IMG/VR virus record: IMGVR_UViG_3300025098_000012
Span: 162,699 to 226,698 of that record
Reading direction: 5' to 3' (one strand)
Length of the DNA stretch: 64,000 nt
Shown here: positions 6,606 to 64,000 of the stretch, piece after piece
How positions within the stretch are numbered: position 1 is the stretch's first letter
Layout: every line of letters begins with the position of its first letter
Notes under the pieces: generated by a model
The model's input: only the letters and a program-made list of their open reading frames with translations
Databases searched by the model: none
What the model was told of the DNA's origin: nothing
Translations under genes and position numbers: made by a program

Positions 6606-7484
6606 TTAACGCTGTACAGTAAGACGAGCAAGACCACGAGGGTTGTAAGCTCCGATACCCAAGTTTTCAAAGACACTGAAGCCGATTGTACGAGCTTTAG
6701 GATCGTCAGCAGAAAGGACGGTCAACTCGGTACGAACAGGGATACGACCAAACATCTCTGGCTCACAGCAGACATAAACAGTTCCAACAGGAACAAGTCG
6801 GCTAGTGATGATCTGAGCACCCCAAAGGGTAGCCTGTAGACCAGTCTTGAGAAGTGCCGCTTGGCTCTCGATGTCGAGAATGTCACGACCGAACTTACGG
6901 ATGTCAGCGTAATCACGAGCATTCATGAATACACGAGCAACACGAAGGTCATGACGCTCAATGAGGCTGTATGCGTCAGCAAGAACAGCACCATTAAGAG
7001 GAGCGATAACAGGAATGTCAGCGTTAGTCTGACCTGCAACGCTATCAAATCCGTTAGCCGCAACTGCATCAAGGATAGCGAATACACGCTCGTCCTCAGC
7101 CGCTTGGATTTGAGCACGAGCAAGATCCTGAGCACGCTCGATAAGGTCGAACCTACGCTCTTTGATCTGTGTGAGTGGGATCTCTGGGTTAGAAGCGATC
7201 TCAAACAATGGGAAGATAACCCTGCGTGGCTTGGTGATAGCAAGGATGTTCTCACCCTCTTCACCAACTACGAAAGCAGTCACATCGGGATCTTTGTCGT
7301 AGATAGGTAAAGCACCATCTGGAAGTTGCTCGACTAAGAAAGTCTTACGACCAACAGAGGTGTAATCTCTACGAAGGCGAAGTGGTTGAGTCATTGAAGC
7401 GGCGAGCTTCGCACGACCCTGTGGAGTCTTAATGTAGTCAGAAATGATCTTCTGTTTTACGGCATTATCAACTGTATTACTCAT
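6606..7484 (-). CDS. Major capsid protein (HK97 fold)
   Basis: 292 aa; HK97-like pattern (VVGEEGE, FEIASNPEI, MNARDYADI, LWGAQIITS, ENLGIGAYNP); lies after protease, scaffold and decoration genes. Confidence 0.85.
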   Translation of the reverse strand: MSNTVDNAVKQKIISDYIKTPQGRAKLAASMTQPLRLRRDYTSVGRKTFLVEQLPDGALPIYDKDPDVTAFVVGEEGENILAITKPRRVIFPLFEIASNPEIPLTQIKERRFDLIERAQDLARAQIQAAEDERVFAILDAVAANGFDSVAGQTNADIPVIAPLNGAVLADAYSLIERHDLRVARVFMNARDYADIRKFGRDILDIESQAALLKTGLQATLWGAQIITSRLVPVGTVYVCCEPEMFGRIPVRTELTVLSADDPKARTIGFSVFENLGIGAYNPRGLARLTVQR

Positions 7485-9852: not shown

Positions 9853-11292
9853 TTATTTCTGCCCGTAAGTGTTAAGGGATAAGAGTTTAGCTAATCTTAC
9901 AAGACGAAGAGTGTCTTGCTTCGACAGATTTTTACCATTTAAGTAGCTTGCTTGCTCCAGATAATCAACTACATCATTATACTGACTGGTTGAGCCGAGC
10001 AAACTAGCTAACTTATAAACATGGGTAGGAATCTGAACATTACAGTGATTATTCACTAGAGTTATGTTCAGTACAGCTTCTTCAACAGACTTAGCTGTTC
10101 TAACAGAAGCATCTAAGAGGCTCATGTACTTGGAAGCAGACATACCCTCTTTGACAATCGTATCGTTTTGTTCAACGACAGACTTATCAATAGGTGGGTT
10201 CATTACTTCTTGAGCCTTCTCTGCTTTGAGTTCGTTTTCTAGCTTTTGGCGAAAACGATCTACAATAGCAGTCTCGTAAACATTTTCGAGCTGTTTCAAC
10301 AAAGACTCGGAAGGTGCGTCAGCTTTATCATCACCACCTTCATCCTCATCCATGTCAAAAGGTCCAGCTTTCTTGTTTAGCTGACCATGAGGGTCATACC
10401 AAGGAGAACTCTGTAAACTAGACGCTTTAGCAATCCACTTCTGTGGAACTTCATTAAGTTGATCATCAGAAGCTGATTTAGCCATGTCAGCTTTAGGGAT
10501 GTCTAATACATTGCGAGCGACAGCTCCTACAAATGCAGGGGTTGCAACCCAAGATGCTTCGATGAATGTAACACCTGCTGTACCACCGATTTCTTCATGA
10601 CCACAAAGCTCTGCTACTCTATGTTGATTTCCTTGTTCATCATAGAAAACATTGCCTTTCTCATATTTGATATGAGAACACATCTCGGTTTCATCAGCGG
10701 CCACATGACCACATTTGGTGCAAATGGTAAAGTCTACGCTACATCCCATAGACATTGAGTTCATTTGACCCGACTCAATCTGTTTAACCAAGTCTTTGTG
10801 TTTGCGATCAGTAGCGACAAGGATGTCTACATATAAAGAATCACCGATGTCTCTAAGAACAGCATCAATGATCCGACCCTTAGATAGTTCTTCAACTTGG
10901 ATATGCTCAACAAAGTTATGAGCACCAATGAAGGTCTGATAAGATTTCTTAATCACACCTCTTGACCATGAGTCGAGGTTGTTATTGATGAACTTATCAG
11001 TGCCAGAGCTGACACGATAGTCAGCGTATTTACGATTAATAGTTTGTCCACCCTCAGTGATCGAGCCTGTCTTTGTGTTTGGAGGTGTGATTGCATCGAC
11101 AGAGCAAACGATAGTGGAGTGGGTAAGTAGAAATCTATCGGGAGTGAAAGGTTCGCCTAAGATGTCCTCTGCTTGCTTTTTGAGCGAAGCATTGATGGTT
11201 TTAGCACCAGAAGCGATCCTTACCTTATCCCATTGTAGACCATGAATGGAGGGCTGAACTACATTAGCCCTAGCATATCTTAAAAATGCCAT
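9853..11292 (-). CDS. Prohead (capsid maturation) serine protease with Cys/His insertion
   Basis: TFIGAHNFVEH, KGRIIDA, SMSMGC followed by CTKC-x-CSH, FIEASWVATPAF; head-operon position. Confidence 0.7.
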   Translation of the reverse strand: MAFLRYARANVVQPSIHGLQWDKVRIASGAKTINASLKKQAEDILGEPFTPDRFLLTHSTIVCSVDAITPPNTKTGSITEGGQTINRKYADYRVSSGTDKFINNNLDSWSRGVIKKSYQTFIGAHNFVEHIQVEELSKGRIIDAVLRDIGDSLYVDILVATDRKHKDLVKQIESGQMNSMSMGCSVDFTICTKCGHVAADETEMCSHIKYEKGNVFYDEQGNQHRVAELCGHEEIGGTAGVTFIEASWVATPAFVGAVARNVLDIPKADMAKSASDDQLNEVPQKWIAKASSLQSSPWYDPHGQLNKKAGPFDMDEDEGGDDKADAPSESLLKQLENVYETAIVDRFRQKLENELKAEKAQEVMNPPIDKSVVEQNDTIVKEGMSASKYMSLLDASVRTAKSVEEAVLNITLVNNHCNVQIPTHVYKLASLLGSTSQYNDVVDYLEQASYLNGKNLSKQDTLRLVRLAKLLSLNTYGQK

Positions 11293-11295
11293 GCT

Positions 11296-14200
11296 TTACC
11301 CCTTAACGATGTCGGAAGGTTTGATGATAAAGAGGCAGGTATAACAAGCGAGCAGTTTCTCACTCTTACCTCCTCTTCTTTTGTAAACAGTATTGCCGAG
11401 TGGAGTTTTACACTTGGGACAACAAGGTTTTTCCTCATTCCGACATTGGCGATAAGTACGATCTTTCTTATACCAATAAATAGCTTGCTTCATGTATCTG
11501 GAGGCAACACGATTAGCTTGCTTTTTGACGGCACGAGAAGTTACAGGAACAGTACCAGCTCCACCTGGTATAGTATCTTGATCGTCAGTATAAATGTTCA
11601 AGTAATCACCCGAAGTATCTACAACAAGATCTTCTACAGGATAGCGTTGCGATCCATGAGGGAACTGCACATCGACCATACCAATTGCAGGGAAGATAGC
11701 TATAACGAGTCCAGACCTTGACGGATTACCACCAAGAAAGGGGTATACACGCATCCCTAGCTCGAACGCTTGGGATCTACGCTGATAGTCAACATATTGT
11801 GTAGATCGTTTTTGCATGATTACAGTGCCTCCACTCTTATAGTAGGTGTCAATAAATGATCTATTAAAATTATTTGCTTGTTTATTTGATGAGGTAGACT
11901 CAATTTCTTGTGTCGCTGTGTCATCAAATAGCTCAGTAAGCCTACTTCTTATGTCTTTGAGCCTCTGTCTCTTAGTCGCACCATCTAAACTTTTCACTTT
12001 TTCTAGTTCTTGCTGTATCTGCTCCCATCTAAACTTTTTCGTGTTATCACTGTAGAGCTGAATACCGTCAATGCTACTCCGAGTTTCTTCAATTCTCCAT
12101 CTTGTCCTAAATTCTTCTCCAGCGGCTTCTCTCTCTTCTTCGGTGTATTCTTTACCAGTTGATAGATCAACACCATCAACGAACACCTCGAAAAACTTAT
12201 CTTTGTTTTCTCTCCAAAAGAGCTTCATTTGCTCTTTGACTTTCTTAGAAGGACCAGAGCTATCACCTTTAGGTTTGTAGTAGCCATCCCCCTTAGACTC
12301 TTTTTCGACAGTATGGAGATTAACGAAACCTCCACTCATGTAATCCCTTAACAGTTTCTTCATGTCATCAGACAATGGGTTAGGACAGGGATCATCTGAG
12401 GGGAGGAGCTTCTTGTCTCCCACACCTGCGGCGTTATTTGTAGGCCCACCAGGACAGTAGTCGTCATCTAATAAATCCAACATATCTCCATAAGGTCCTT
12501 GCTCACCTCCAACTACAGCTTTAAAATCTTCTGTGTCGAGGTTTTCAGTGACCGACTCAATCAAATCTCGTGTCTTACTAGGGTTAGTGCCTTGTTGGGA
12601 GAGCATACTGATGCCTTCTTCCCAAGCCTCTGATCCTGTTTGTCTTGCGAGTTCAAGTAATCGGTCGGGTACTTCGGCATACCCATCAATGACACCCTCA
12701 CTATTTATCATGCGTATTGTATTGAGGGCTGTTTCAGATGCTTTTAAGTTTACGAGCTTACCCTGTAATGATTTCTTTTCTTCATCAGACAGACCTTCCC
12801 CATCATTTTCTAGGAGTGCTTTTGCTTCACCAATCTCCTCTGCGACCCTTCCAACCATAGCATTACGCTGTTCTTCATTCATCTTCTTAAAGCGTCTGCC
12901 TTGAACTCTGCGTACATTCTGTAGGTGCTTCTCTTTATCGTGATCATCCCCATCAGTAGGGAACTCAAGTAGCCCGAACTCTGGATCTTCCACAATACTC
13001 TTTTGTGCATGGGTTGTTGCTAAGTAGCTACCTAGATTTTGTGCGTACTCCTTTTGAACAGCCTCATAGTTTTCTAAGTCTGATTTTAAGGAACTGAGAG
13101 AATCTTCTGCATCTTTCAAAGAATTCTTAAGTTGCTTTAGAGTTTCCTCATCTGTGTCATCGTCAGCTTCCGATAACTTTTGTTGAGCTTTATTCACCTT
13201 GTCGGTGGTTTCCTTAATGTCCTTATTGAGTTGTTCTACTGTAGGAGGAGGTGTGGGGGGCTTTAAATCCTTTGCCTCTTCGTCAATGTAAGACTGTAGA
13301 CCATCGAGTCCTTGATTTCTCATCACTTCTTCGACTTTGAATGCACCGGATCCGTAAGCCTGCACCATTTGTTGAACTTGATCTTCGGTCAACTCATCAA
13401 GTGCATCTACAGTTTCACTTATCCTTTGAATAAATGTGCGAGTGCTCTTTCTAGTTGATGCAAGATCCTTCTTCTCAAGTCCTTTGATTTGTTCCTTGAG
13501 ATCACGCTTCTCTTTATCGCTTAAAGAAGGATCTTCGAGCTTTTTTTCGAGATTCTCTATCTTCTCACTCGTGCCTTTGCTTAACTTATCCCTAAAGGCT
13601 TTCTCAAGGCGATCCTTGATTTCTGCCTTTTGGACATAGCTCGGCTGTTCCAATAAAGGAGCACCTTCAACAAACGGAGGTTCTTCTTTCGGAGGTGTAT
13701 CATCCCCCTTTGCGTCATCCTTTCCCGATTCATTTCTAGGTTTTGGCTCACCCTTACCTTTGCTTTTACCCTTGCCTTTGGGTTCTTCTTCTCCTGTTTG
13801 CTTCTCACGCTCTTTAGCTCTCTCGTCCAAGACATCTTTGGTTTCTTTTACTTCTTCTTCAGTAATGTCGGATGCCTCTTGAACATCAACCTCGACAGCA
13901 TCAATCCCCTCTTCTTCAAGAGATGTGGTGAGCTTTTCAGCGACTCTCTTTTTATAAGGACCTCGCTTTTTGCCTTTATCGGATCTTGTTTTTCTTTTCT
14001 TCTTAGGTGGTGGTTCACCTACTTCTTCCCGAACCTCCTCATGGATGTCCATAAGAAGAGCCATAATGTCTCTCATGGTGCGTTCTTCAACAAGAGACAT
14101 ATCTCTCATATCACGACCATTGTTCATCCTTGAGAGCAGGTCATATTGTTCATCATTGAGAGTAGCGGCTACGGAATAGCTGACATCACTAGAGTCTCCC

Positions 14201-14541
14201 TTAGACCCTCTAGCTTTATCCATAGCTTTGTTAAAGTCTTGGACAGCTTTTGGGTGGGCACGATTATAAGCTGTATTAAACGACAACTCATCACCTGTCA
14301 GCCTACTCTTATACTTACGACTTTTGAGCTTGTCTTTGACCTTCTTAACGATCTTCTGCTCTTTTTTCTGTTTCCTTTTCTGCTCTGGCGTGAGCTTTTG
14401 CTTCTTTCGCTTTTTCTTTTTAGTTGGCTTACGAGATCCGTCCTCACGCTTTTGAGAAGCCGCAACTCGGTGTGCCTCTAAAAGAAGGCGATCTGTTTTC
14501 TCTAGCTCCGTTTGGAGTTCTAGTAGAAGGCGACTAATCAT
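11296..14541 (-). CDS. Large charged virion-associated protein; C-terminal 173 aa probably also a separate gene (11296-11817)
   Basis: 1081-aa ORF; internal late motif at 11852, GGAGG at 11828-11832, ATG at 11817; C-terminal SH3-like segment, RVASRY tag and CxxC zinc ribbon. Confidence 0.7.
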   Translation of the reverse strand: MISRLLLELQTELEKTDRLLLEAHRVAASQKREDGSRKPTKKKKRKKQKLTPEQKRKQKKEQKIVKKVKDKLKSRKYKSRLTGDELSFNTAYNRAHPKAVQDFNKAMDKARGSKGDSSDVSYSVAATLNDEQYDLLSRMNNGRDMRDMSLVEERTMRDIMALLMDIHEEVREEVGEPPPKKKRKTRSDKGKKRGPYKKRVAEKLTTSLEEEGIDAVEVDVQEASDITEEEVKETKDVLDERAKEREKQTGEEEPKGKGKSKGKGEPKPRNESGKDDAKGDDTPPKEEPPFVEGAPLLEQPSYVQKAEIKDRLEKAFRDKLSKGTSEKIENLEKKLEDPSLSDKEKRDLKEQIKGLEKKDLASTRKSTRTFIQRISETVDALDELTEDQVQQMVQAYGSGAFKVEEVMRNQGLDGLQSYIDEEAKDLKPPTPPPTVEQLNKDIKETTDKVNKAQQKLSEADDDTDEETLKQLKNSLKDAEDSLSSLKSDLENYEAVQKEYAQNLGSYLATTHAQKSIVEDPEFGLLEFPTDGDDHDKEKHLQNVRRVQGRRFKKMNEEQRNAMVGRVAEEIGEAKALLENDGEGLSDEEKKSLQGKLVNLKASETALNTIRMINSEGVIDGYAEVPDRLLELARQTGSEAWEEGISMLSQQGTNPSKTRDLIESVTENLDTEDFKAVVGGEQGPYGDMLDLLDDDYCPGGPTNNAAGVGDKKLLPSDDPCPNPLSDDMKKLLRDYMSGGFVNLHTVEKESKGDGYYKPKGDSSGPSKKVKEQMKLFWRENKDKFFEVFVDGVDLSTGKEYTEEEREAAGEEFRTRWRIEETRSSIDGIQLYSDNTKKFRWEQIQQELEKVKSLDGATKRQRLKDIRSRLTELFDDTATQEIESTSSNKQANNFNRSFIDTYYKSGGTVIMQKRSTQYVDYQRRSQAFELGMRVYPFLGGNPSRSGLVIAIFPAIGMVDVQFPHGSQRYPVEDLVVDTSGDYLNIYTDDQDTIPGGAGTVPVTSRAVKKQANRVASRYMKQAIYWYKKDRTYRQCRNEEKPCCPKCKTPLGNTVYKRRGGKSEKLLACYTCLFIIKPSDIVKG

Positions 14542-14547: not shown

Positions 14548-15189
14548 CTACCCTCTCAAGTTAAGGAACTTACGAGCAACACGCTGTGCCATCTTCTCAC
14601 TTCTACGAGAAAGATCGGGATCACCTTTGTCTCCACGACCAACACCTTGTAGATCGGGGTCATCGCTAATTTGTACTCTGTTCTTACGGAGGTCTTTGCG
14701 AGGAGGCTTATTCTTAGGAGATCTCCTAACGAGCTTTTCAACTGCTTCGTCCTCTTTTTCAGCTTGGGTCTTAGTCGCTACTCTCTTGTGAGGACAGATA
14801 TATGAACTTGCCTTACGCTCCATACTCGCCATCTTGCGAACATCAAAGCAATGTCCTGCAAAACTCTTTCTGAGAACTCTAAGTGCTTGAGCGAGGATGA
14901 GGTAAAACCTATGAGCGTGTTCGCTCTCTCTGGTGTCTAGCCAAACAGCTTGGAGCTTTCTAACTTCTTCAGCTTTACCGTCTAAAACATCTACATATTT
15001 AAGCTCTTTATCAAGAGAGACAGCTTCCTCAAAAAGTGCTTCTATGGTGAGGAAATGCTTACGGATGCAGTCTGGACATCTTTTACGAGGTTGGTTAAGA
15101 TGATCTTCGAGTAGGACAATCTGTTTACAGATCTCTCGTAAGTTATATAAGGGACTCATAATCGGCAATAAACCTTGATCGTTGCTCAT
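14548..15189 (-). CDS. Late protein with CPDC motif and RVA tags
   Basis: ATG at 15189 with GAGG RBS; late motif at 15233; RKMAS, RKAS, RVATK and terminal RVARKFL. Confidence 0.7.
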   Translation of the reverse strand: MSNDQGLLPIMSPLYNLREICKQIVLLEDHLNQPRKRCPDCIRKHFLTIEALFEEAVSLDKELKYVDVLDGKAEEVRKLQAVWLDTRESEHAHRFYLILAQALRVLRKSFAGHCFDVRKMASMERKASSYICPHKRVATKTQAEKEDEAVEKLVRRSPKNKPPRKDLRKNRVQISDDPDLQGVGRGDKGDPDLSRRSEKMAQRVARKFLNLRG

Positions 15190-15319
15190 AACTACACCTC
15201 TTTTTTTTGGGATACTAACTACAAGTAGGAAATATAAACAAACTATTAAACTAAGAGAGCGTAACCCCTTATTTATATCTCTATGTAAGAACCACCAAAC
15301 ACTCTTAAAGGAGAACAAC

Positions 15320-15583
15320 ATGGGCAAGAAAAGACCAGATCAAGTGAAGCGAGTCCACGAGGCTTTGAAGATGAACGCTAAAGAGGCCAAGTACGGTATG
15401 CCGTACTGTAAGTGGCGAAAAGAAGAATCTCGTTGGGAGATCTCAGACGCTTCGGGTCGAGATGCGTCAATGTTCTTCTATCCCGAAGGGGAGCGTTGGA
15501 CTTATCAAGCTCCTTACTACGATGAGGAGGACTCAACCTTTAGTCGTTCACTTGGGAACGCCTACTGTTGTTACACAGGTTAA
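15320..15583 (+). CDS. Hypothetical protein
   Basis: AAGGAG RBS, ATG at 15320, GTAACCCCTTAT motif upstream. Confidence 0.7.
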   Translation: MGKKRPDQVKRVHEALKMNAKEAKYGMPYCKWRKEESRWEISDASGRDASMFFYPEGERWTYQAPYYDEEDSTFSRSLGNAYCCYTG

Positions 15584-23607: not shown

Positions 23608-24156
23608 TTATGGTCGTTTAAGTATAGCTAGGCATAATCCAGATGAAGGGTATTTACGACCTAGTGATGCCCATACTCGTTTAGCATCATTGCTAGTTGA
23701 ACCTGTTTCCATACAACCATCTGGAACAAATATAAAAGGCTGACCTACTTTATTCCAGTAAGTTCTAGCAAAAGTAAGGTACATATCAGTTCCTATTTTC
23801 TTACCTTTGTATTCATCTTTAATTGCAGTATTGTAAACTGAAAGGATAGGGGCATAAGGTCTATCCTTCCAATCATTCTGAACAAGGTGCGGGTATTTGT
23901 TCAAAAGTTTTTGAACATCATTAGAACATTTTAGGCTCTCAACCTGTGATATGTCTTGCCCCATGATAGGGTTTAGTTTTTTTTCATTTAACCCACCTTG
24001 TATTTGACCAATGCGTTTACGACCATGAAAAATGACAAGTTGATAAAAACTCCCAACATTACCCTTAACAGTGTACTTGATCTTTTCATCTCTCAATGGG
24101 TTAGCTATCTCTAATCTCTTTGCATATTTACTAGCTACTCTTTGATATGGTTTCAT
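23608..24156 (-). CDS. GNAT-like acetyltransferase with RVA tag
   Basis: MKPYQRVASKY start; IKDEYKGKKIGTDMY acetyl-CoA-motif-like segment; SNDAKRVWASL; late motif at 24196. Confidence 0.55.
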   Translation of the reverse strand: MKPYQRVASKYAKRLEIANPLRDEKIKYTVKGNVGSFYQLVIFHGRKRIGQIQGGLNEKKLNPIMGQDISQVESLKCSNDVQKLLNKYPHLVQNDWKDRPYAPILSVYNTAIKDEYKGKKIGTDMYLTFARTYWNKVGQPFIFVPDGCMETGSTSNDAKRVWASLGRKYPSSGLCLAILKRP

Positions 24157-24223
24157 CTGTTTATTCCTTATATGCCTAATCATATAAGTATAGTGATAAA
24201 TAAACTATTGAAAGGTTAAATCT

Positions 24224-32893: not shown

Positions 32894-33487
32894 TTATTTT
32901 AGCAGGTCATACTCTTCTTTAGAGATATAAACAGGATATGGGTTAGGTTGAATTAGATGAGCGTTGAACTCAACTCCAAAGTGATCACACACTGTCTCAA
33001 TGGCATCGAGGTTCTTCTGAGTATCTTCCCAAACAGACACGCTCTGAATGTTAGGGTATTTCTTGAGGAGATCAAAGGTTAGTTTAGCCTTATAGCGAGA
33101 TGTAGACCCTGTGCCTGGTTTTAGGTGAACCTCATCAAAGTCCAACCCTTTACCCTTTAATAGCTCGGCTACACGATAACGCATAGCACCGTTGTCATTA
33201 AGGCGACCTGTACACATGATCGCAAGAGTGTCCATGTCAGAGATAGAGCGTTTAGCTTCACCAACAACACCATTAAACCAATAATCCCCACTAGGCTTTT
33301 GAGGGATAAAAGGTTCACTTAAACTAATGGCCTCGTTGAACCAATAACCCATTTTTTTGTTCGACCACCACTCTGGTGGTTCGGGGCTACGGAACAATGT
33401 ATTATCAAAGTCAAAGATATGAAGCTCAAGACTTTCTGAGCTTGTTTTCATATACTTTGTTGCCACTCTCGCAACAAGATTTCTCAT
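32894..33487 (-). CDS. HAD-family phosphatase ('Swiss Army Knife' RNA-repair type) with RVA tag
   Basis: MRNLVARVATKYMKTS, then IFDFDNTLF, CTGR, WED; GAGGAG RBS; late motif at 33528. Confidence 0.7.
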   Translation of the reverse strand: MRNLVARVATKYMKTSSESLELHIFDFDNTLFRSPEPPEWWSNKKMGYWFNEAISLSEPFIPQKPSGDYWFNGVVGEAKRSISDMDTLAIMCTGRLNDNGAMRYRVAELLKGKGLDFDEVHLKPGTGSTSRYKAKLTFDLLKKYPNIQSVSVWEDTQKNLDAIETVCDHFGVEFNAHLIQPNPYPVYISKEEYDLLK

Positions 33488-33542
33488 GTCTGTTCTCCTC
33501 AAAGGTAATATACAGAAGTATCTCATAATAAAGGATCTACAA

Positions 33543-37355: not shown

Positions 37356-37439
37356 TTCAATGCCTTTCAAAGAAGTTATTGAAAAGCGTACCAAAACGAC
37401 AAATGTTAGTCAAGAACTAAAGGTCATAAATACCTATTT

Positions 37440-38480: not shown

Positions 38481-39077
38481 CTACAAATCACCCATCTTCT
38501 CTTTGAGAACCTTCTTATACTCCGACCATGATCTCCTAAAGGTTCGCATGAAGCCCTCAAGATCATCGTAGAGGCTAGATGGATTGAGTACACCTGTGAG
38601 CTTCGGCAAGTTCCAACCCCCACTGAAGATGTTATCAAGAAACTCCTGTGCATCTTTATGCCCTGTATGCTCTCGCTCATCGTTGAAGTTGATCAAATAC
38701 TCGACTACATCTTCACCGTAGCTAAACTCTATGTCGATCTGTAAGCGATCTTCATCACAGAGCATCACCCCACAAAAGTCACACTCTTCCTCGACTGTTT
38801 CCTCGACTCTAAAGCCAAGCTCATGCAAGAGCTTAAGAAACGCTCCGATAGCGTAAAAGGTGTTTTGGTTTTCAAGCACCTCGTCTGAGACACCACGAAC
38901 ACCATTACGCTTCTCGGTCATCCGTTGCTCTATGAGATTTTGTCGAGCGTTTTCCTCGATAGCACACTCAAACATAAGTCCGTATGTGCGAAATGTGTCT
39001 TCAACACCTTTAAGTGCAGTGTCAGTTTCAAGAAAGTCTGCGAAGATGAACTTCTCGTCATCATGGATCTCATTCAT
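38481..39077 (-). CDS. Hypothetical protein
   Basis: AGGAGG RBS; GTAACCCCTTAT motif at 39102. Confidence 0.7.
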   Translation of the reverse strand: MNEIHDDEKFIFADFLETDTALKGVEDTFRTYGLMFECAIEENARQNLIEQRMTEKRNGVRGVSDEVLENQNTFYAIGAFLKLLHELGFRVEETVEEECDFCGVMLCDEDRLQIDIEFSYGEDVVEYLINFNDEREHTGHKDAQEFLDNIFSGGWNLPKLTGVLNPSSLYDDLEGFMRTFRRSWSEYKKVLKEKMGDL

Positions 39078-39198
39078 ATTGTCCTCCTGTTCTAAGGGGC
39101 GATAGATAAGGGGTTACATCTGCAACCTCTAAACTACTAACGCTTCCTAGAACACAAAACGGACAATTTTTCTTTTTCAAACTTAGAAAAAAGTTTTT

Positions 39199-39753
39199 TT
39201 ACTGACCAAAGTCCCAAGGAAGGTCGTACATATCTTGACCCGAACGAGCGTCTTTCCAACCAACTCGTGCTTGGATAGAACCACGAGCAGGAATGATTTC
39301 TCCCTTAGCTAGAAGCTCGTTACTGTATTTAGCTCCGACACCATTAGTAGCAATCGTGATATGTGGGTCATCATTCTTAACAAGTCGAGCTAAAGGACCT
39401 TGAGGCTCAACAAGAACAGCCATACCCTTATCGTCATGTGCGTAGCCCACGATGTTAAGAACAACATTCTTACCGATAAGATCAGCATAAGGCTCAAGGA
39501 TGTTAGACTCAGCACGACCCTCTCTCTTGAGAGCTTTCTTTTCCTTCTTATCAAAGAACTCAATGGTCATGTGGTGAGCGGCTACTTTCCAACCCATAGC
39601 TTCTGGATCAAGACCCGATTGATCTTGGAACCAGTTAAGCAAATCTCTCTTATCAATAACAGCTTCGGCAAACATGACGCTTGCAGGTTTATCTTGGGCG
39701 AGCTTCCTCATGTGTACAGAAGCGACTCTTCGGATCATGCGATTGTAGTTCAT
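39199..39753 (-). CDS. 2H phosphoesterase with RVA tag
   Basis: RRVASVHMRKLA leader; HMTI and HITI motifs; late motif at 39801. Confidence 0.75.
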   Translation of the reverse strand: MNYNRMIRRVASVHMRKLAQDKPASVMFAEAVIDKRDLLNWFQDQSGLDPEAMGWKVAAHHMTIEFFDKKEKKALKREGRAESNILEPYADLIGKNVVLNIVGYAHDDKGMAVLVEPQGPLARLVKNDDPHITIATNGVGAKYSNELLAKGEIIPARGSIQARVGWKDARSGQDMYDLPWDFGQ

Positions 39754-39898
39754 GTTAAACTCCTTTTAGAGATTGGTTAAACGCATATAAACTAGAGTCA
39801 TATAAACAATCTACAAATCCTGTAACCCCTTATCTATGAGATTGTGTGGGAGAGGTATGTAAGCCTTGCCCAAGCCTTACTCCAACAAGGAGATCCAA

Positions 39899-49657: not shown

Positions 49658-50074
49658 TTACTTAGCAGGGATTGAGTTTGGCAGATTAGTGATTGTTTCA
49701 CTAATCCAATCATGACCACTATCTAACAAGTCTTCACCCCAAAAGCTAGGGTCAGAGATTTTCACTGTAATGCAAATGCAAGATTCACATTCCGATGTAG
49801 TTACAAAATCTTCAATCATCTGACTGTGGGGCCACTGATTGATAGAGGTTTTAAAATCTTCTACAGATCTTTTTAGGATCGCCCTGTTCATGTGCATGAA
49901 ACAAAGGTTAATTTTGTCTTCTTCATACTCACGATCATCTACCATGATGATAGCACGAGCATTACTTAATTTTGCTGTCTTTGCGGCAGACTTCGTTCTT
50001 CTTGAGGTGCTGTTTTCAAGTCGAGCAATACGATCTTCAAGATTTCTGATGGTTTCGTTTGCTGATCTTCTCAT
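49658..50074 (-). CDS. MRRSA-leader cassette protein
   Basis: MRRSANETIRNLEDRIARLENSTSRRTKSAAKTA; cassette UTR at 50075-50140. Confidence 0.8.
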   Translation of the reverse strand: MRRSANETIRNLEDRIARLENSTSRRTKSAAKTAKLSNARAIIMVDDREYEEDKINLCFMHMNRAILKRSVEDFKTSINQWPHSQMIEDFVTTSECESCICITVKISDPSFWGEDLLDSGHDWISETITNLPNSIPAK

Positions 50075-58519: not shown

Positions 58520-60382
58520 ATGCAGAATATAACTAGTAGAATAAGACCACCAAGAGCAGTAGTCGAACAGATCGAAGAATACCTATTAAGCCAAGTCGGG
58601 GTATACGAAACCCTTAATCTAAATGTTAATGTTCCCCCACCTCCAAGAACTCGTGGTTATGTAGAGGACTTAGACTTGAGAGTGGAGATAATTCCTCCTC
58701 ATGCGTCTGAAAAATATAATAGAGTTGAAGCTAAATATGACTCTACGAACTCTGTTCTTTATGTGAACCTCCCCTACTTTGAAAAAAAATATGAGGGAAG
58801 GGAACTAGCAGAAGCTCTTTACAGAGTAGTCGCTCACGAGCTAGTTCATGTATATCAAATCCTTTATACTAGATCACGAGATGGCGATCCGAGATCTGAC
58901 TCTCCAACAGCAGGGCTTCCTGGACTTAGAGAGAGAACCCCACAATATAGACAGGAAACAGGTGAGATACTTGACCATCGTTTAGACGACAATGAGTTTT
59001 ACCCACGCTTAGAGGACACCATCAATGCAATCAACTTTGTAGCGAGAACAAGGCAAGATGAGATAGCGAGTATCATTTCTTATGTTGTAGGTGAGTCAAA
59101 ACGACCAGCGTACCGTTCTAAGCACTTAAGAGAGCCTATGGCATGGCTTGAAGACTTAGGGAAGTACGCACCTAAAAAGTTCCTCAAAGCTGTGAGAAAG
59201 ATCAAGAACGAGTTCCCCGAAACAGCAAAAATGCGTACTGCCGATTTCTTTAGGCAGGTTAGTCCTCCCGATGAGTTAAGTACCTTTAGTAATGGAACAC
59301 CCACAGGTAAAGGAACAGACCTTAAAGACAAAGGTGAAGGCTCTCAAATGCCAAATGGAGATGGAGCTAGGAATATAGGTCGCCCTAGCCCCGACTCCCC
59401 TAACCTTAAATCAAGAAATCTTGATCGCTCTGAGTCTTATGGTCGTAAGCCTGCTGAGGGATTTGATGGAGGTTATGTGCATGATAGTGGTAGCGGTAGT
59501 GCTAGGGTTATCCCTTATGATAGTGGTTTTGCGAACAACTCATCTCCTTTGAGAAAAGCGTCAAAGCGTGTTGCTCACAGATACTTAGATTCATTAAAAG
59601 CACCTTCGATGAAGACATCGGCAAGACCGATACGCATTGATAAAGCTAAGATCAAAGAGATGACTAAGGATGCGATCAAAACCCTTGAGGACATAGTTAA
59701 GAAAACTAAGGAGGAAACCTTATCCAAAGCTATCAAACGCAAGACGAGAGACGGAACTATATTTCTAGGTAGCTACCTAGATTCTGGTTCCTCTATTGAG
59801 ATTCAGATCATGGTCAAAGAAACGCACGAAAATGGGCAGTACATCTACAATCCACAAAGGGGTTTGCATGAGATCGAAATCTATCTTGCAGATAGAACCG
59901 TCAAAGAACTGACTCACCCTTATCTGTATAAAATGTCAATAAGACCAGCGATGGTTAAGCACATATACTCTATTCTCATACATGAGATTACTCATGCCGT
60001 TGAGCGAATCCGATACTTGCAGACTGACGAGGACTTGCTAGGCTTTGGTTTAAATCAAGGATCTAGGTTTGATAAGGCAAAGATCAAGACACGCAAAGAC
60101 AAAGATAAGGTATTAAAGGCGTATTACAATGACCCTAGCGAGGTTAAGGCTTACCTCCAACAGATTGCTGATGAAGTAGAGGAATACCTTAACCAAAAGC
60201 ATGGAGGGCTGTCTAAAGAATCCCTACAGTCTGGTTGGAGAGATTCTTTTGGTTATTACGGTTCTAAGACTTGGGATCAAGTTTCTAAATACCTCACCCC
60301 AAAGAACCAAAAGTATATCAAGAAAGCAGTGCTCTCACATCTCATAGAGACCATAGACTCAAAGGAATCAACCAATGGCTAA
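58520..60382 (+). CDS. Polyprotein-like late protein with two HExxH metallopeptidase-like modules
   Basis: AHELVHVYQ...DDNEFY and IHEITHAVE...DPSEVKAY; RTAD, RKAS, RVAHRYL, KTSA boundaries; late motif at 58476. Confidence 0.75.
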   Translation: MQNITSRIRPPRAVVEQIEEYLLSQVGVYETLNLNVNVPPPPRTRGYVEDLDLRVEIIPPHASEKYNRVEAKYDSTNSVLYVNLPYFEKKYEGRELAEALYRVVAHELVHVYQILYTRSRDGDPRSDSPTAGLPGLRERTPQYRQETGEILDHRLDDNEFYPRLEDTINAINFVARTRQDEIASIISYVVGESKRPAYRSKHLREPMAWLEDLGKYAPKKFLKAVRKIKNEFPETAKMRTADFFRQVSPPDELSTFSNGTPTGKGTDLKDKGEGSQMPNGDGARNIGRPSPDSPNLKSRNLDRSESYGRKPAEGFDGGYVHDSGSGSARVIPYDSGFANNSSPLRKASKRVAHRYLDSLKAPSMKTSARPIRIDKAKIKEMTKDAIKTLEDIVKKTKEETLSKAIKRKTRDGTIFLGSYLDSGSSIEIQIMVKETHENGQYIYNPQRGLHEIEIYLADRTVKELTHPYLYKMSIRPAMVKHIYSILIHEITHAVERIRYLQTDEDLLGFGLNQGSRFDKAKIKTRKDKDKVLKAYYNDPSEVKAYLQQIADEVEEYLNQKHGGLSKESLQSGWRDSFGYYGSKTWDQVSKYLTPKNQKYIKKAVLSHLIETIDSKESTNG

Positions 60383-62336
60383 AAATGTACCTACCGATGA
60401 GAAGTTATGGACTGAGATACAATCTCTAGCTAAAGGTGAGTCTAGTAAGCCTGTTTCTAGGGGTAAAGAGTCTGTCAATCCTGTGAATGATGGGAAAGGG
60501 TTTGAAACTTTCCCATCGGCTTATGCTAACGGTTGGGCTTTGGCTCAGTACAAGCGACTAGGTGGTAAGTGGAAAAAGGAATCTAAAAAAGCAGGTCTGA
60601 TAAGACCTCCAAAACATATTGTAGATAAAGTTTCAGAGATACTGACGGCAGGGTTTGCTTCTTATTGGGTTGGGAAGCAAAAGGAAATGGATAATAAACC
60701 GTATTTATCTATATCTCTTGAAAAGATCTCTAACTTTGAAAACCTTATCGAAGATTTAGATGAAGCGTATATGTCCGTAAGGATGAAACGAGCTACTTTT
60801 GATGAATTGGAAAGAGCTTTAAGAGCTTTGAGAGTATCGACTCAAGAGCTTATAGATATGTTTAAAGGGCGAATACCTCCTACCCTTGAAAAGATGAGTC
60901 ATATTTTAGAAAACATGAGTCCGATTAGTGTCTTTGAAGAACCTAAAAAATATAAAAAAGAATTTATGTTTTTAGGTAGGACATTCGGTTTAATTTCAGA
61001 GTTGAGATCTCTGAGACAAGATCCTGTTTCTTACATCTCAGAGAAATCAAGGGCATTATATGAGGGTGAAGCTAATAAAGTTAAAAGGTTTGATAAATTC
61101 TTAGATCGACCTTCTCAATCGACATGGATTTTTCAAACAGAAGATTTAGGCACACTTCGGTTACAAGTAAGAGAATCTAAGGGTGCTAAGGGTTTAGCGT
61201 ATTATCGTTATGATGAAATTGATGATCTACATACAATAACCGTTAGGGTGTTTCCTAACTCCAATGACTTGAGTGGGGAAGATCTAGGTAAGATTAAAGA
61301 TTATGTACGGCATGAGTTAGTTCATGCTATGCAAAAAAAAATGTCATTGGACTTCAATGTTGATCAAGCAGGTATTCCTTTCCAAAAGCGAGATATGACT
61401 TACTTGCAAGGACATAAATACAAAGAAAAAGACCTTAAAGCTCAATATGAAAGAGAGGGTCTTGACTCAGATTTGGTAAGTATCCATGCACTTGATGACA
61501 TCGAGTTTTATACGAGACTTTTAGATGAAGTGGTGGAATTTCAGAGACTTAATGTGAGTGGTTCAGACCTTAATCAAGAGGTGCATGAGTGGGTGTCCAA
61601 AAGAAAATTTTTTGTAAGTTTAAAAAGGTTTAAGAAAAAGAATTGGAACAAGGCTGTTGGTATTTTCTTTGAAGCAGTCAGTTCTAATCGAAAGTATGCT
61701 CGTAAGTGGGACAAAGATCATTGTGAGTCTAAGAGTTGCGATGAGATGGGCTTCTCTGAAAAGGCTTCATGTCGCCCCTATAAGAACTGCTACGAGAAGT
61801 CAGCGTCCTCCAAAGTTAAACCCATGTACTTAGGTTCAGAAAGTGGAGCGATGGCTTACGATTTCTACTTTATGCGTGTGGAAAAGGATTACTATTACCA
61901 CTACACATACAGAGATCGTGCCGAAGAAATAATAGAGGATGGTTATTTAAGACCCAATTTCTACAACGATCAACCAGGAGGACAAGGTGTTTTTGCCATC
62001 TCTGGATCTTATGGACAAGAGGTCACAGACCTTCAAGTCAGTGGTTCTAGGAAAAAACACATGGATAGGATAGTTGCCCTCAAGTTTAAGACTAAAACTG
62101 AGCCTAAGTATGGATACCCCGAAGAAATCATTTGGGATAAACCTGTGAAACTTATTCGACCAGAGATTGTTAGCTTTTCGGAAGCTGAGGCAGACATTAA
62201 GAGGAATGAGGACTTAGGAGAATACTTCAAGGTATTTTACGACTTTAAGAAGGCTGTCGAGATTAAAAAAGAATATGGAACAGTGATCTCTAGGGTTGCT
62301 CACAGATACTTAAGGAATCTAAAAAATGAAACATAA
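60375..62336 (+). CDS. Polyprotein-like protein: small basic module, HExxH module, Cys module, ART-like module
   Basis: FPSAYANGW; RHELVHAMQ...DDIEFY; WDKDHC...MGFSEKASC; YHYTY...IIEDGYLRP; terminal RVAHRYL. Confidence 0.75.
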   Translation: MAKNVPTDEKLWTEIQSLAKGESSKPVSRGKESVNPVNDGKGFETFPSAYANGWALAQYKRLGGKWKKESKKAGLIRPPKHIVDKVSEILTAGFASYWVGKQKEMDNKPYLSISLEKISNFENLIEDLDEAYMSVRMKRATFDELERALRALRVSTQELIDMFKGRIPPTLEKMSHILENMSPISVFEEPKKYKKEFMFLGRTFGLISELRSLRQDPVSYISEKSRALYEGEANKVKRFDKFLDRPSQSTWIFQTEDLGTLRLQVRESKGAKGLAYYRYDEIDDLHTITVRVFPNSNDLSGEDLGKIKDYVRHELVHAMQKKMSLDFNVDQAGIPFQKRDMTYLQGHKYKEKDLKAQYEREGLDSDLVSIHALDDIEFYTRLLDEVVEFQRLNVSGSDLNQEVHEWVSKRKFFVSLKRFKKKNWNKAVGIFFEAVSSNRKYARKWDKDHCESKSCDEMGFSEKASCRPYKNCYEKSASSKVKPMYLGSESGAMAYDFYFMRVEKDYYYHYTYRDRAEEIIEDGYLRPNFYNDQPGGQGVFAISGSYGQEVTDLQVSGSRKKHMDRIVALKFKTKTEPKYGYPEEIIWDKPVKLIRPEIVSFSEAEADIKRNEDLGEYFKVFYDFKKAVEIKKEYGTVISRVAHRYLRNLKNET

Positions 62337-64000
62337 GTCTTTAATCGAAAAGGTGGCCCAACGCTATTTAGAGTCTGTAAAGCGTGATGATCCTAAAAAA
62401 AAGAACACTGGTAAGGGTGGGTTAGGTACTTGGTTTGCAGGGCATGGTGGTGGAGATCCCGATGATCGTGCTACATGGGGCGATTGGATTGCTATAACAC
62501 CTGTAAAACACACTATCAAAAAAGAAGATGGAGAGGACAAGACCTATGAACCAGGAGACATTGTTGGCCCATGTGCCATATCTAGTGAAAAAGAGTGGTC
62601 AGATGTTACAAGTGGGGGAAAAAAACCCCTCAAGTGTATGCCACGAGAAAAAGCATGGAAAATGCCCAAGAAAGACCGAGCCGAGATTGCCAAAAAGAAA
62701 AGGCGGGAAGAAGCGAAGCATCGTGGGAAGAAGCCTGTTAATACTCCGACTTTCTCTGATGAAGCTAAAGAGATCACAGAGAAAAAGAAGAAGACTTCTG
62801 GCTTAATCAGACCTCCAAAACACATTGTAGATCAAGTAGCAGAAATAGGTAAAGGATTACTCGCCCAATACTGGATTAAAAGGGAAAAAGAGGATAGCTC
62901 CAAAGGTGGACTAGATCCAGAGTCTGTTGAGGGTCTTGAGTGGATACTTGAGGATCTTGATTATCTGCCACTTGGGGTCAAAAGAGGTGAACATGATGAG
63001 GAAGAAGTGATCTTCCAAGTCAGAAATGTACAGAGAGCTTTTTCCGAGATAGATGAACAGATGGAATCTGCAAACCTCAAATACTCAGACTTCCACAAAA
63101 TCAAGACAAAGATAGATCAGCTCGATGCACAGAGCATCTTTAATGACCCAAGAGGGAATAAGGCTCTCATCGGGTCTATCTCGGATAGGGCATCTGATTT
63201 ACTTCGTGAGTTTAAAAAATGGTCAACAGGGAGTAAACAATACATCCCCACCTTAATGCGTAATGACTACCTTGAAGCTGTCGAACGACTGTCAAAGTAC
63301 AAGGTCAAGGACAGTGGTAGATACTATGTTGAAGATGATGAGCTAGGCTTAGTGGCAGTACATCTTCAAGAGTCCTCACATGGTGCGGCTCAATACTATT
63401 GGGATGGTATTCACCACATCATATTTAATGTTCTCAAGAATATGACTGAACTCCCTCTCAAGTATTTAACAGATCGAGAAACGATAGCAGGACATGAGCT
63501 AGTTCATGCAATGCAACAACATTACGCTAATAAAGCGAACATAGAGGAAGCAGGATTACCAAGTCAGAAAAGAGATGAACAGTTTCGTTTTGACATGAAG
63601 GAGAAACAGAAAGAGCTGAGAGTCCAATATGCTAGAGAGGGGATGGATTTTGAGCTGATCTCTATCCATGCGTTAGATGACATAGAGTTTTACTCTCGCC
63701 TACTCGATGAGGTTACTGAGTTCAAAAGACGCAATAAGGGTCTTAATGATGAAATACATAAATGGGTAAAAAAACGACCTTTTTTTGTAAGTCTTAAGAG
63801 ATTTAAGCGTAGGAATTGGAAAAAAGCAGTAGGCATCTTTGTTGATGCTGTGCAACTTAAAGCTAAGTCAGCTAGTCGGGTAGCTCATCTCTATTTGCAA
63901 GCGGCTGCTCAACCTGCACAAGACCTAGCAGGTGTCAAAACATGGGTCGATAAAACCCGACAAGACCAAATCAATAACGATACCTCTACCCCAAATAAAT
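62326..64000 (+). CDS. Partial polyprotein-like protein with HExxH module (runs off the window)
   Basis: Hand translation MKHKSLIEKVAQRYL...KKTSGLIRPPKHIVD...GHELVHAMQ...HALDDIEFYSRLLDEV...KSASRVAHLYL; not in the track. Confidence 0.8.
   Translation, partial: MKHKSLIEKVAQRYLESVKRDDPKKKNTGKGGLGTWFAGHGGGDPDDRATWGDWIAITPVKHTIKKEDGEDKTYEPGDIVGPCAISSEKEWSDVTSGGKKPLKCMPREKAWKMPKKDRAEIAKKKRREEAKHRGKKPVNTPTFSDEAKEITEKKKKTSGLIRPPKHIVDQVAEIGKGLLAQYWIKREKEDSSKGGLDPESVEGLEWILEDLDYLPLGVKRGEHDEEEVIFQVRNVQRAFSEIDEQMESANLKYSDFHKIKTKIDQLDAQSIFNDPRGNKALIGSISDRASDLLREFKKWSTGSKQYIPTLMRNDYLEAVERLSKYKVKDSGRYYVEDDELGLVAVHLQESSHGAAQYYWDGIHHIIFNVLKNMTELPLKYLTDRETIAGHELVHAMQQHYANKANIEEAGLPSQKRDEQFRFDMKEKQKELRVQYAREGMDFELISIHALDDIEFYSRLLDEVTEFKRRNKGLNDEIHKWVKKRPFFVSLKRFKRRNWKKAVGIFVDAVQLKAKSASRVAHLYLQAAAQPAQDLAGVKTWVDKTRQDQINNDTSTPNK

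What the first reader, a model, noticed from the sequence alone, without database searches (positions are those of the whole stretch)
39199..39814. Tagged 2H phosphodiesterase
Seen: RVASVHM-RKLA leader, then two HxT motifs. Established: 2H enzymes cleave cyclic phosphates, and phage Acb1 is a 2H-type nuclease that degrades CBASS signals. Inference: an injected RNA-repair or anti-signalling enzyme.
Basis: partly seen in the sequence, partly recalled or inferred. Interest (0 to 1): 0.6.

Follow-up and report, generated by a model that had tools for sequence, protein, structure and literature searches.

The report
Leader-tagged phage cyclic phosphodiesterase
A marine jumbo phage encodes a CNPase/tRNA-ligase-type 2',3'-cyclic phosphodiesterase, probably for RNA-end repair, that carries a short address peptide shared with many late and head-assembly proteins, so it may be loaded into the capsid and delivered with the DNA.

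Summary
Window 39199-39753 (-) is a 184-aa gene with two invariant HxT motifs (H61-M-T63, H131-I-T133), preceded by a roughly 23-residue leader whose core is R-V-A-S-x-[H/Y]-M-[R/K].

The protein is a 2H phosphoesterase of the CNPase / tRNA-ligase-CPD branch. All 21 family members hit PF08302. The AF2 model has pLDDT 90.5 and matches CNPase at Z 12.3-12.7 and Trl1 at Z 11.2. It is not Acb1-like (Z 5.9) and not LigT-like (Z 6-7).

Phage relatives of this fold are fused to CCA-adding enzymes, SAK-HAD phosphatases and AAA_33 kinases. A SAK-HAD gene 6 kb away carries the same leader. No RNA ligase was found in a complete 376-kb relative. I therefore favour ligase-free RNA (tRNA) 3'-end healing over signal degradation.

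The leader is real and modular. At least 10 proteins in this genome carry it at one end or the other (0.001 expected by chance). These include head-operon proteins. More distant orthologues of the enzyme lack it.

The tagged transcription units sit behind a promoter-like motif that also precedes the head operon, a baseplate gene and a lysin gene. Capsid loading and co-injection is thus plausible (about 0.4) but unproven.

Verdict: a known enzyme kind in a new, interesting delivery context.

The parts
39199..39753 (-). CDS of the 184-aa 2H (CNPase/Trl1-CPD type) cyclic phosphodiesterase, P0001
39685..39753 (-). N-terminal leader, residues 1-23. The model shows a detached helix (residues 3-19) of low confidence. 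The core RVASVHMR is at 39706-39729.
   Evidence: (present in the 72-96% identical homologues that are not N-terminally truncated, absent in the four 48-54% identical ones)
39559..39576 (-). HxT motif 1 (residues 60-65), on a beta strand of the model
39346..39366 (-). HxT motif 2 (residues 130-136), on a beta strand of the model
39760..39765 (-). Ribosome-binding site AAGGAG
   Evidence: read directly
39802..39813 (-). Late-type promoter-like motif (TAGATTGTTTAT), ending 48 nt upstream of the ATG
   Evidence: (19 in window vs 0.79 expected)
39821..39837 (-). 17-mer core of a roughly 27-nt recurrent element (candidate early promoter) directly upstream of the late-type motif
39102..39118 (+). 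Second perfect copy of the 17-mer, inverted, just 3' of the gene. Role unknown; a hairpin was called at 39112-39127.
32894..33487 (-). SAK-type HAD phosphatase gene carrying the same leader (core at 33446-33469) and the same late-type motif (33528-33539). Likely partner enzyme.
   Evidence: (PF10307 E 1.3e-18); the tag is conserved in the TARA relative L011
38481..39077 (-). Conserved 198-aa acidic neighbour, in synteny with the 2H gene. Weak resemblance to a T3SS-chaperone/YbjN-like fold.
23608..24156 (-). 182-aa protein of unknown function with the N-terminal RVAS tag (24118-24141) and the late-type motif (24196-24207)
14548..15327 (-). ORF holding the first gene of the head operon (about 213 aa from the start after the late-type motif at 15234-15245, i.e. 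about 14548-15189). A tag-like motif sits at its C-terminus (14560-14583).
11296..14541 (-). 1081-aa K/E-rich head-operon protein. Its C-terminal barrel-helix-zinc-ribbon domain contains the motif (11488-11511). An internal late-type motif lies at 11852-11863.
9853..11292 (-). Prohead maturation protease. It has a tag-like stretch at residues 384-392, conserved only in close relatives.
6606..7484 (-). HK97-type major capsid protein
58520..64000 (+). Three consecutive large genes (620, 653 and >558 aa), each carrying the motif (59567-59590 internal; 62292-62315 C-terminal; 62350-62373 N-terminal). They lie behind one late-type motif at 58477-58488.

Best explanation
The gene encodes a standalone 2',3'-cyclic phosphodiesterase of the CNPase / tRNA-ligase-CPD branch of the 2H superfamily.

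Chemistry (inferred from the family): H61 and H131 act as the acid/base pair, and T63 and T133 hold the phosphate. The enzyme opens a 2',3'-cyclic phosphate, as left by metal-independent RNases such as anticodon or acceptor-end nucleases, to a 2'-phosphate.

Pathway (inferred from fusions and neighbours): the SAK-type HAD phosphatase 6 kb away, which carries the same leader and promoter motif, then removes the phosphate. In the complete relative, tandem CCA-adding enzymes carrying the same tag could rebuild a tRNA 3' end. No ligase would be needed.

Leader: the first ~23 residues are a detachable address peptide shared by many late proteins. I read it as most likely a cargo-loading signal that brings the enzyme into the procapsid, perhaps clipped by the prohead protease near A-Q-E/D at residues 19-21, so that it enters the next host with the DNA.

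My odds: enzyme class 0.9, RNA-end healing 0.6, capsid loading 0.4. The overall confidence given is for the composite statement.
For: Enzyme class:
- Pfam PF08302 scores 22.5 bits for this protein, and all 21 family members match (best E 1e-7).
- The AF2 model has pLDDT 90.5, with both motifs on strands.
- Foldseek's top hits are nearly all 2H proteins.
- VIA-align gives CNPase Z 12.7 (rmsd 2.9 over 139 residues) and Trl1 kinase-CPD Z 11.2, then a gap down to Z 7.6. The wide search gives CNPase 12.3 and Acb1 5.9.

RNA healing:
- ESM Atlas phage clusters join this fold to PolyA_pol (545 aa), HAD_SAK_1 (300 aa) and AAA_33 (271 aa).
- The tagged HAD_SAK_1 gene is in the window, and its tag is conserved in a TARA relative.
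- The complete relative G001 has two tandem PolyA_pol domains in one frame with the tag, plus 9 tRNA genes.
- G001 has no Rnl1, Rnl2, RtcB or Tpt1.
- Iyer et al. 2021 (PMC7824862) assign 2H and standalone SAK-HAD proteins of jumbo phages to RNA repair.

Tag:
- 0.001 occurrences expected, 4-10 observed.
- Conservation is at protein level.
- It sits at either terminus.
- It is absent from the four 48-54% identical orthologues, which are operon-internal; one orthologue carries a different leader.
- It is present in head-operon proteins.

Timing:
- The motif TARHTYNTTTAT occurs 19 times in the window against 0.79 expected.
- It precedes the head operon, the gene upstream of the capsid gene, a baseplate wedge gene, an amidase gene and every tagged transcription unit.
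- It is conserved upstream of the 2H gene in relatives.
Against: - No activity, virion or timing data exist.
- This protein's own Pfam score is 0.5 bit under the curated cut-off.
- The gene lies among nucleotide-metabolism and replication genes (nrdB, nrdA, SNF2, UvrD). It also has the candidate early-promoter element upstream, so 'late' rests on a motif alone.
- The protease's tag-like stretch is not conserved beyond close relatives.
- The loose tag pattern also hits a conserved strand inside the capsid protein, and even the catalytic motif of the enzyme itself, so loose matches are unreliable.
- The CCA-adding enzymes are absent from the 73%-complete contig that holds the window.
- A CPDase that makes 2'-phosphate ends would block RtcB-type sealing, so without a phosphatase it would not repair anything.
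Confidence: 0.5

Rival explanations
1. Anti-signalling enzyme. The 2H domain degrades an immune second messenger (CBASS/type III CRISPR cyclic oligonucleotides, as Acb1 does, or 2'-5'-linked oligonucleotides, as coronavirus NS2 and rotavirus VP3 do) rather than healing RNA ends.
For: - Acb1, NS2, VP3 and a poxvirus cGAMP phosphodiesterase all share the 2H fold and appear among the weaker structural matches (Z 5.0-6.1; BFVD ranks 26 and 37).
- Iyer et al. 2017 (PMC5512222) argued that phage 2H domains not linked to ligases may counter nucleotide signals. No ligase was found here.
Against: - The protein is twice as close to CNPase/Trl1-CPD (Z 11-12.7) as to any signal-degrading 2H enzyme.
- All family members hit the tRNA-ligase CPD model.
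- Phage relatives are fused to CCA-adding, SAK-HAD and polynucleotide-kinase-like domains.
- There is no sequence match to Acb1.
Confidence: 0.12
2. Nucleotide salvage. The enzyme and the HAD phosphatase convert 2',3'-cyclic mononucleotides from host RNA breakdown into nucleosides that feed the phage's dNTP supply. The tag would organise a metabolic complex.
For: - The order 2H, then a ~190-aa gene, then nrdB, with nrdA nearby, is conserved from close relatives to 51%-identical untagged ones.
- The region is rich in nucleotide-metabolism genes, read by eye.
- A dNK-type kinase is present.
- CNPase itself acts on free 2',3'-cNMPs.
Against: - Fusions of this fold in phages are to RNA-end enzymes, not to salvage enzymes.
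- The tag is shared with head-operon and unrelated large proteins.
- In the tagged lineages the gene has its own promoter motifs rather than being read only with nrdB.
Confidence: 0.12
3. The leader is a real shared peptide but not a capsid address. It might dock the late proteins on another hub: RNA or ribosome, a membrane, a phage factory, or the chaperone-like 198-aa neighbour. Or it might control their stability.
For: - The peptide is a basic amphipathic helix. It sits on three RNA-end enzymes and on a protein with hydrophobic C-terminal segments.
- The neighbour shows weak T3SS-chaperone-like matches (Z 4.4-6.5).
- The 2H gene also has the candidate early-promoter element.
Against: - The motif occurs in head-operon proteins next to the prohead protease.
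- Its carriers sit behind the same motif as head, baseplate and lysis genes.
- It works from either terminus, as known cargo-loading peptides do.
Confidence: 0.3
4. The leader is an artefact: a wrong start codon or a chance resemblance.
For: The more distant orthologues start at the residue equivalent to position 22-24.
Against: - There is no start codon at that position in this gene.
- A strong ribosome-binding site precedes the annotated ATG.
- The motif is kept in all homologues that are not N-terminally truncated despite synonymous changes.
- The chance expectation is 0.001.
Confidence: 0.02

Closest known systems
CPD domain of fungal/plant tRNA ligase Trl1 (PF08302) and the catalytic domain of vertebrate CNPase
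   Same: Both have two HxT motifs and the same fold at Z 11-12.7. All family members match the Pfam model. The expected chemistry is opening of a 2',3'-cyclic phosphate to a 2'-phosphate.
   Different: This protein is a standalone 160-aa domain with no fused kinase or ligase. No ligase or Tpt1 is present in the complete relative. It carries an added N-terminal leader and is of phage origin.
2H phosphoesterases and standalone 'Swiss-army-knife' HAD phosphatases of jumbo phages (Iyer et al. 2021, PMC7824862)
   Same: The same two enzyme families occur in a jumbo phage and are interpreted as RNA-end processing or a counter-nucleotide function.
   Different: In that paper the enzymes go with ATP-grasp ligases. 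Here no ligase was found. Both enzymes also share a terminal peptide and a promoter motif, and neither feature came up in the term searches I ran in that paper.
Phage Acb1 (anti-CBASS 2H nuclease)
   Same: It belongs to the 2H superfamily, has HxT motifs and is a small standalone phage protein.
   Different: The structural match is only Z 5.9 (rmsd 4.3 over 114 residues), against 12.3 for CNPase. There is no sequence similarity, and the family context differs.
T4 capsid targeting sequence, the HK97 protease targeting tail and encapsulin cargo-loading peptides (from my own knowledge), and packaged polyvalent/MuF-fused 2H domains (Iyer et al. 2017, PMC5512222)
   Same: In each case a short terminal peptide or a fusion brings enzymes into an HK97-fold shell for delivery. 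2H domains are already predicted as virion cargo (BFVD ranks 19 and 39).
   Different: The sequence motif here is unrelated. It is shared by about 10 (RVAS type) plus about 10-22 (second leader type) proteins. Loading, cleavage and ejection are all untested.
E. coli CCA-adding enzyme with an HD domain that has 2',3'-cyclic phosphodiesterase and phosphatase activities (from my own knowledge, not checked with the tools)
   Same: The same three activities (open the cyclic phosphate, remove the phosphate, rebuild CCA) are proposed for ligase-free tRNA 3'-end repair.
   Different: Here the activities would sit on separate 2H, HAD and nucleotidyltransferase proteins. In other phages they occur as 2H-nucleotidyltransferase fusions.

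Membership tests
2H phosphoesterase superfamily | Two H-x-T/S motifs, conserved across the family | tested here: met
   H61-M-T63 and H131-I-T133 are invariant in 21 sequences.
2H phosphoesterase superfamily | Two-lobed alpha+beta fold with each motif on a beta strand | tested here: met
   The AF2 model (pLDDT 90.5) has strands at 61-66 and 131-136. The top structural matches are nearly all 2H proteins.
2H phosphoesterase superfamily | Phosphodiesterase activity dependent on the two histidines | not testable with these tools
   Needs an enzyme assay with H61A/H131A controls.
tRNA-ligase CPD / CNPase branch (PF08302) | Score at or above Pfam's gathering cut-off | tested here: inconclusive
   This protein scores 22.5 bits against a cut-off of 23. 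All 21 family members match at E <= 0.01, best 9.8e-8.
tRNA-ligase CPD / CNPase branch (PF08302) | Structure closer to CNPase/Trl1-CPD than to other 2H branches | tested here: met
   CNPase Z 12.3-12.7 and Trl1 Z 11.2; the next branch is at Z 7.6. Atlas rows carry PF08302.
tRNA-ligase CPD / CNPase branch (PF08302) | Fusion to a polynucleotide kinase (and ligase) domain | tested here: not met
   The protein is a standalone 184 aa. An AAA_33 kinase is encoded elsewhere and has no tag. No ligase was found.
Acb1 anti-CBASS nucleases | Sequence or close structural kinship with Acb1 | tested here: not met
   No tblastn match to Acb1 genes in 50,697 phage records. 7t27 aligns at Z 5.9. BFVD Acb1 models have TM 0.38-0.42.
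Acb1 anti-CBASS nucleases | Cleavage of 3'-5' cyclic oligonucleotide signals | not testable with these tools
   Needs an assay on cGAMP and cA3.
LigT/ThpR | Match to PF02834 and closest fold | tested here: not met
   1 of 21 members matches, at E 0.0035. Z is 6.1-7.1.
Capsid-targeting (cargo-loading) peptides | Short terminal peptide shared by several otherwise unrelated proteins of one phage | tested here: met
   10 carriers, at the N- or C-terminus, against 0.001 expected.
Capsid-targeting (cargo-loading) peptides | Expression together with head genes | tested here: inconclusive
   A promoter-like motif is shared with head, baseplate and lysin genes. There are no transcript data, and a second, probably early, element lies upstream.
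Capsid-targeting (cargo-loading) peptides | Physical presence in procapsid/virion; binding to shell or scaffold; removal by the prohead protease | not testable with these tools
   Needs virion proteomics or co-expression.

The most novel reading that the evidence does not exclude
The RVAS-type motif, and perhaps the related second leader (MRRSASE...RIARLE, about 22 copies in the complete relative), would be a general cargo-loading code of a widespread marine jumbo-phage clade. It would load dozens of late proteins into the HK97-type head. Among them would be a complete ligase-free tRNA 3'-end repair kit: a CNPase-type cyclic phosphodiesterase, a SAK-HAD phosphatase and tandem CCA-adding enzymes. 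The incoming genome would then arrive with ready-made protection against tRNA-cutting defences.
Probability: 0.3. Interest if true: 0.8.

Novelty: new variant of a known kind. Interest (0 to 1): 0.58.

Why it matters
2H enzymes in phages are known, and some are predicted to travel in the virion as parts of giant fusion proteins. Here the same idea would be realised differently: a short portable peptide on small single-domain enzymes.

If the peptide is a loading signal, three things follow:
- It would name the internal cargo of an abundant, uncultured marine jumbo-phage clade from sequence alone.
- It would point to pre-packaged RNA repair as a counter-defence.
- It would offer a compact tag for loading foreign proteins into HK97-type shells.

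The predicted ligase-free route (cyclic phosphodiesterase, then phosphatase, then CCA-adding enzyme) is directly testable with purified proteins.

Tried and rejected
- Complex prediction of the capsid protein with leader residues 1-40 gave 'no answer' (score 0.00, controls not run). It is evidence neither for nor against binding.
- PHROGs, NCBIfam and the PDB sequence search gave nothing for the enzyme.
- The protein atlas gave nothing for the 1081-aa head-operon protein. I first took that protein for a portal and dropped the idea, because it is a low-complexity K/E-rich protein.
- The protease's tag-like stretch looked like strong support but is conserved only in close relatives, so I give it little weight.
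- Loose tag patterns also hit a conserved capsid-protein strand and the enzyme's own first catalytic motif. Only terminal, strict matches are counted.
- A text search for the motif strings in papers found nothing relevant.
- RNA evidence is one 151-nt metatranscriptome contig at 39441-39591, too little to show expression.
- Foldseek found nothing for the 198-aa neighbour. VIA-align matches to T3SS chaperones are below the tool's reliability bar.
- The large representative-protein search was not used, as the family was already settled.
- No other genetic code was needed.

Full report
WHERE WE ARE

The window is the last 64 kb of a 226,698-bp IMG/VR virus contig that CheckV rates 73% complete. 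GC content is 43%. A 375,691-bp relative rated 100% complete (G001) carries a 95%-identical copy of the gene. Holders of the DNA are marine and seawater metagenomes, and relatives occur in TARA assemblies. This is an uncultured marine jumbo phage. Its HK97-type capsid protein has more than 2,000 close relatives in public data.

THE OBSERVATION

The ORF is at 39199-39753 on the minus strand (184 aa), with an AAGGAG site 6 nt before the ATG. The two HxT motifs are there and are invariant in 21 homologues. The leader is there as well.

WHAT THE ENZYME IS

- Pfam gives one match, the tRNA-ligase phosphodiesterase domain PF08302. The score is 22.5 bits against a cut-off of 23.
- Scanned one by one, all 21 family members match it (best E 9.8e-8). 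Only one touches LigT_PEase.
- An AlphaFold model built on the family alignment has mean pLDDT 90.5. Residues 1-20 form a low-confidence detached helix, and each HxT lies on a strand.
- Foldseek against the PDB returns almost only 2H proteins.
- VIA-align puts the CNPase catalytic domain at Z 12.7 (rmsd 2.9 Å over 139 residues), the fungal Trl1 kinase-CPD at 11.2 and RICH at 10.0. A gap then follows, down to 7.6 and below for the bacterial and plant CPDases, LigT and rotavirus VP3.
- The search that does not lean on Foldseek agrees: CNPase 12.3, Acb1 (7t27) 5.9, MHV ns2 6.1, Usb1 5.1-5.3.
- Among viral models the best matches are giant-virus proteins, several of about 740-770 aa, one of them annotated as an RNA ligase. 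Acb1 models come only at ranks 26 and 37.

The protein is therefore a member of the CNPase/Trl1-CPD branch. The expected chemistry is opening of a 2',3'-cyclic phosphate. It is not an Acb1 relative in any useful sense.

WHAT IT IS PROBABLY FOR

Domain fusions in relatives. ESM Atlas clusters of phage proteins join this fold to three partners:
- a CCA-adding nucleotidyltransferase (545 aa; PF01743 in all members);
- HAD_SAK_1 (300 aa);
- an AAA_33 kinase (271 aa).

Plant and fungal tRNA ligases and eukaryotic 'Swiss army knife' repair proteins also appear in that list.

The partner phosphatase. The window itself encodes a HAD_SAK_1 phosphatase (32894-33487, E 1.3e-18). It begins with the same leader and sits behind the same promoter motif. 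In a TARA relative both the gene order and the leader are kept.

CCA-adding enzymes and tRNAs. The complete relative G001 has one 948-aa frame with two tandem CCA-adding-type domains, followed by the tag and a small domain. In the window's genome that small domain is a separate tagged 122-aa protein. G001 also has nine tRNA genes.

No ligase. Neither genome shows Rnl2-type or RtcB ligases or Tpt1. The Rnl1 model also found nothing, but its control rang nowhere, so that blank is weak.

My reading is a ligase-free healing route for RNA, most simply tRNA 3' ends: open the cyclic phosphate (2H), remove the phosphate (HAD), rebuild the end (CCA-adding enzyme). This is inference from fusions and neighbours, not a demonstration. 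The same activities are known together in the E. coli CCA-adding enzyme's HD domain; that is my recollection and was not checked here.

Two rivals remain.
- Degradation of immune nucleotides was proposed by Iyer et al. 2017 for phage 2H domains that lack ligase partners.
- Salvage of 2',3'-cyclic mononucleotides is suggested by the very stable position of the gene just upstream of nrdB, which holds even in 51%-identical relatives.

THE LEADER

Occurrence. The strict motif is expected 0.001 times in the proteome and is seen 4-5 times. A slightly looser form finds ten carriers in the 227-kb contig. Eight are at the N-terminus. One is at a C-terminal end and one lies about 70 residues from a C-terminus, inside a folded domain. 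A further tag-like stretch ends the first head-operon protein. Codon usage differs between copies, so the protein is what is conserved.

Modularity.
- Within the enzyme family the leader is present in the 72-96% identical homologues, apart from one N-terminally truncated sequence. It is missing from the four at 48-54% identity. Two of those four instead have a C-terminal extension.
- The untagged genes examined are operon-internal, while the tagged ones have their own upstream motifs. One orthologue has a different 35-residue leader.
- The leader evolves faster than the domain, but its core is kept.

Carriers. Carriers in the window include the following:
- the first gene of the head operon;
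- the C-terminal domain of the 1081-aa K/E-rich protein that precedes the prohead protease;
- three consecutive large proteins at 58.5-64 kb.

The C-terminal domain of the 1081-aa protein exists as a standalone gene. In an IMG/VR relative that gene lies immediately upstream of the protease. In a 485-kb huge phage its upstream neighbours are a scaffold-like acidic protein and a SAK-HAD fusion.

A second, longer leader (20 residues, zipper-like) heads six more proteins in the window and about 22 in the complete relative. Its first ten residues line up with the first leader without gaps. That alignment is by eye only.

TIMING

A 12-nt motif (TARHTYNTTTAT) occurs 19 times in the window against 0.79 expected and 43 times in the contig. 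Nearly all copies lie 20-60 nt upstream of a start codon in the right orientation.

It precedes:
- the head operon;
- the gene upstream of the capsid gene;
- a baseplate wedge gene;
- an amidase/endolysin gene;
- most genes with the second leader;
- every transcription unit that holds an RVAS-tagged gene, including the 2H gene (39802-39813) and the HAD gene.

I take it for the late promoter. This is inferred from the company it keeps.

The 2H gene also has a copy of a different, roughly 27-nt element directly upstream. That element has 45 copies in the contig and precedes, among others, the DNA polymerase. The gene may therefore be made both early and late. Both elements are conserved upstream of the gene in close relatives.

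HOW THE PIECES FIT

Four facts together make capsid loading the best single explanation of the tag:
- It is a short peptide that works from either end.
- It is shared by otherwise unrelated late proteins, including head-operon proteins.
- A prohead protease is encoded in the same operon.
- 2H domains are already predicted to ride in virions as fusions (BFVD ranks 19 and 39).

An acidic residue follows the motif within 5-15 residues in each carrier (A-Q-E/D at residues 19-21 here). That would suit a T4- or phiKZ-type protease, but glutamate is common and this remains a suggestion.

I put capsid loading at about 0.4. Docking on some other hub is about 0.3. One candidate hub is the conserved acidic 198-aa neighbour, whose model weakly resembles secretion chaperones (Z 4.4-6.5, below the reliability bar). 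The single complex prediction allowed (capsid protein plus leader) returned no answer and counts for nothing.

VERDICT

The enzyme assignment is right, but the closest analogue is CNPase/Trl1-CPD, not Acb1. RNA-end healing is favoured over anti-signalling. 'Injected' is a reasonable but untested reading.

The enzyme alone is a new member of a known kind. The portable tag, shared with a matching phosphatase and with head proteins and set under a common late-type motif, is what lifts it to a new variant worth a bench test.

Noticed in passing
window 2320-2379(-), 5044-5103(-), 22920-22979(-), 50015-50074(-), 52610-52669(-), 56447-56506(+): A second 20-residue leader (MRRSASE...RIARLE type, zipper-like) heads at least 10 proteins in the contig and about 22 in the complete relative. 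Most copies have a near-identical ~60-nt upstream region. One copy is internal to a 584-aa ORF.
   Followed up: partly
window 39102-39118(+) and 39821-39837(-); 45 copies in the contig: A ~27-nt element with a 17-mer core recurs 45 times, often in inverted pairs; one pair forms a perfect hairpin outside the window. A perfect inverted pair brackets the 2H gene. It may be an early promoter, a terminator or a cassette boundary.
   Followed up: partly
window 36258-37394(-) and 37440-37470(-): The 378-aa ORF just downstream of nrdB ends with the same six residues and about 24 nt as nrdB. This looks like a homing-endonuclease insertion that duplicated the nrdB 3' end. Pfam found no domain, and the GIY-YIG look is by eye only. 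In a distant relative nrdB is a 642-aa ORF.
   Followed up: partly
window 38481-39077(-): The acidic 198-aa protein is always next to the tagged 2H gene. The AF2 model has pLDDT 88.5. The best structural matches are T3SS class I chaperones and YbjN-like proteins at Z 4.4-6.5, below the reliability bar.
   Followed up: partly
window 11852-11863(-) inside gene 11296-14541: A late-type motif and start codon inside the 1081-aa gene would give a separate 173-aa C-terminal product (small barrel, motif helix, zinc ribbon). Standalone homologues occur in an IMG/VR relative (immediately upstream of the prohead protease) and in a 485-kb huge phage.
   Followed up: partly
G001 257904-260747(-) (loci L082/L083): In the complete relative, two tandem CCA-adding-type nucleotidyltransferase units lie in one frame with the tag and a small C-terminal domain. 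The window's contig has only that small domain, as a 122-aa tagged ORF.
   Followed up: partly
contig 155362-161904(-), just upstream of the window (locus L081): A giant 2181-aa ORF lies behind a late-type motif and has no PHROG match. It carries a weak tag-like stretch that is conserved in the relative. It could be a virion enzyme.
   Followed up: no
window 8246-9814(-): The very acidic 522-aa protein between the protease and the capsid gene (scaffold position) has an EF-hand calcium-binding motif and two internal repeats.
   Followed up: no
locus L019 9890-10444: A 44%-identical orthologue of the enzyme carries a different 35-residue N-terminal leader. Different lineages therefore put different leaders on the same enzyme.
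   Followed up: no
window 39441-39591: One 151-nt contig from a seawater metatranscriptome maps inside the gene at about 97% identity. DNA carry-over cannot be excluded.
   Followed up: partly
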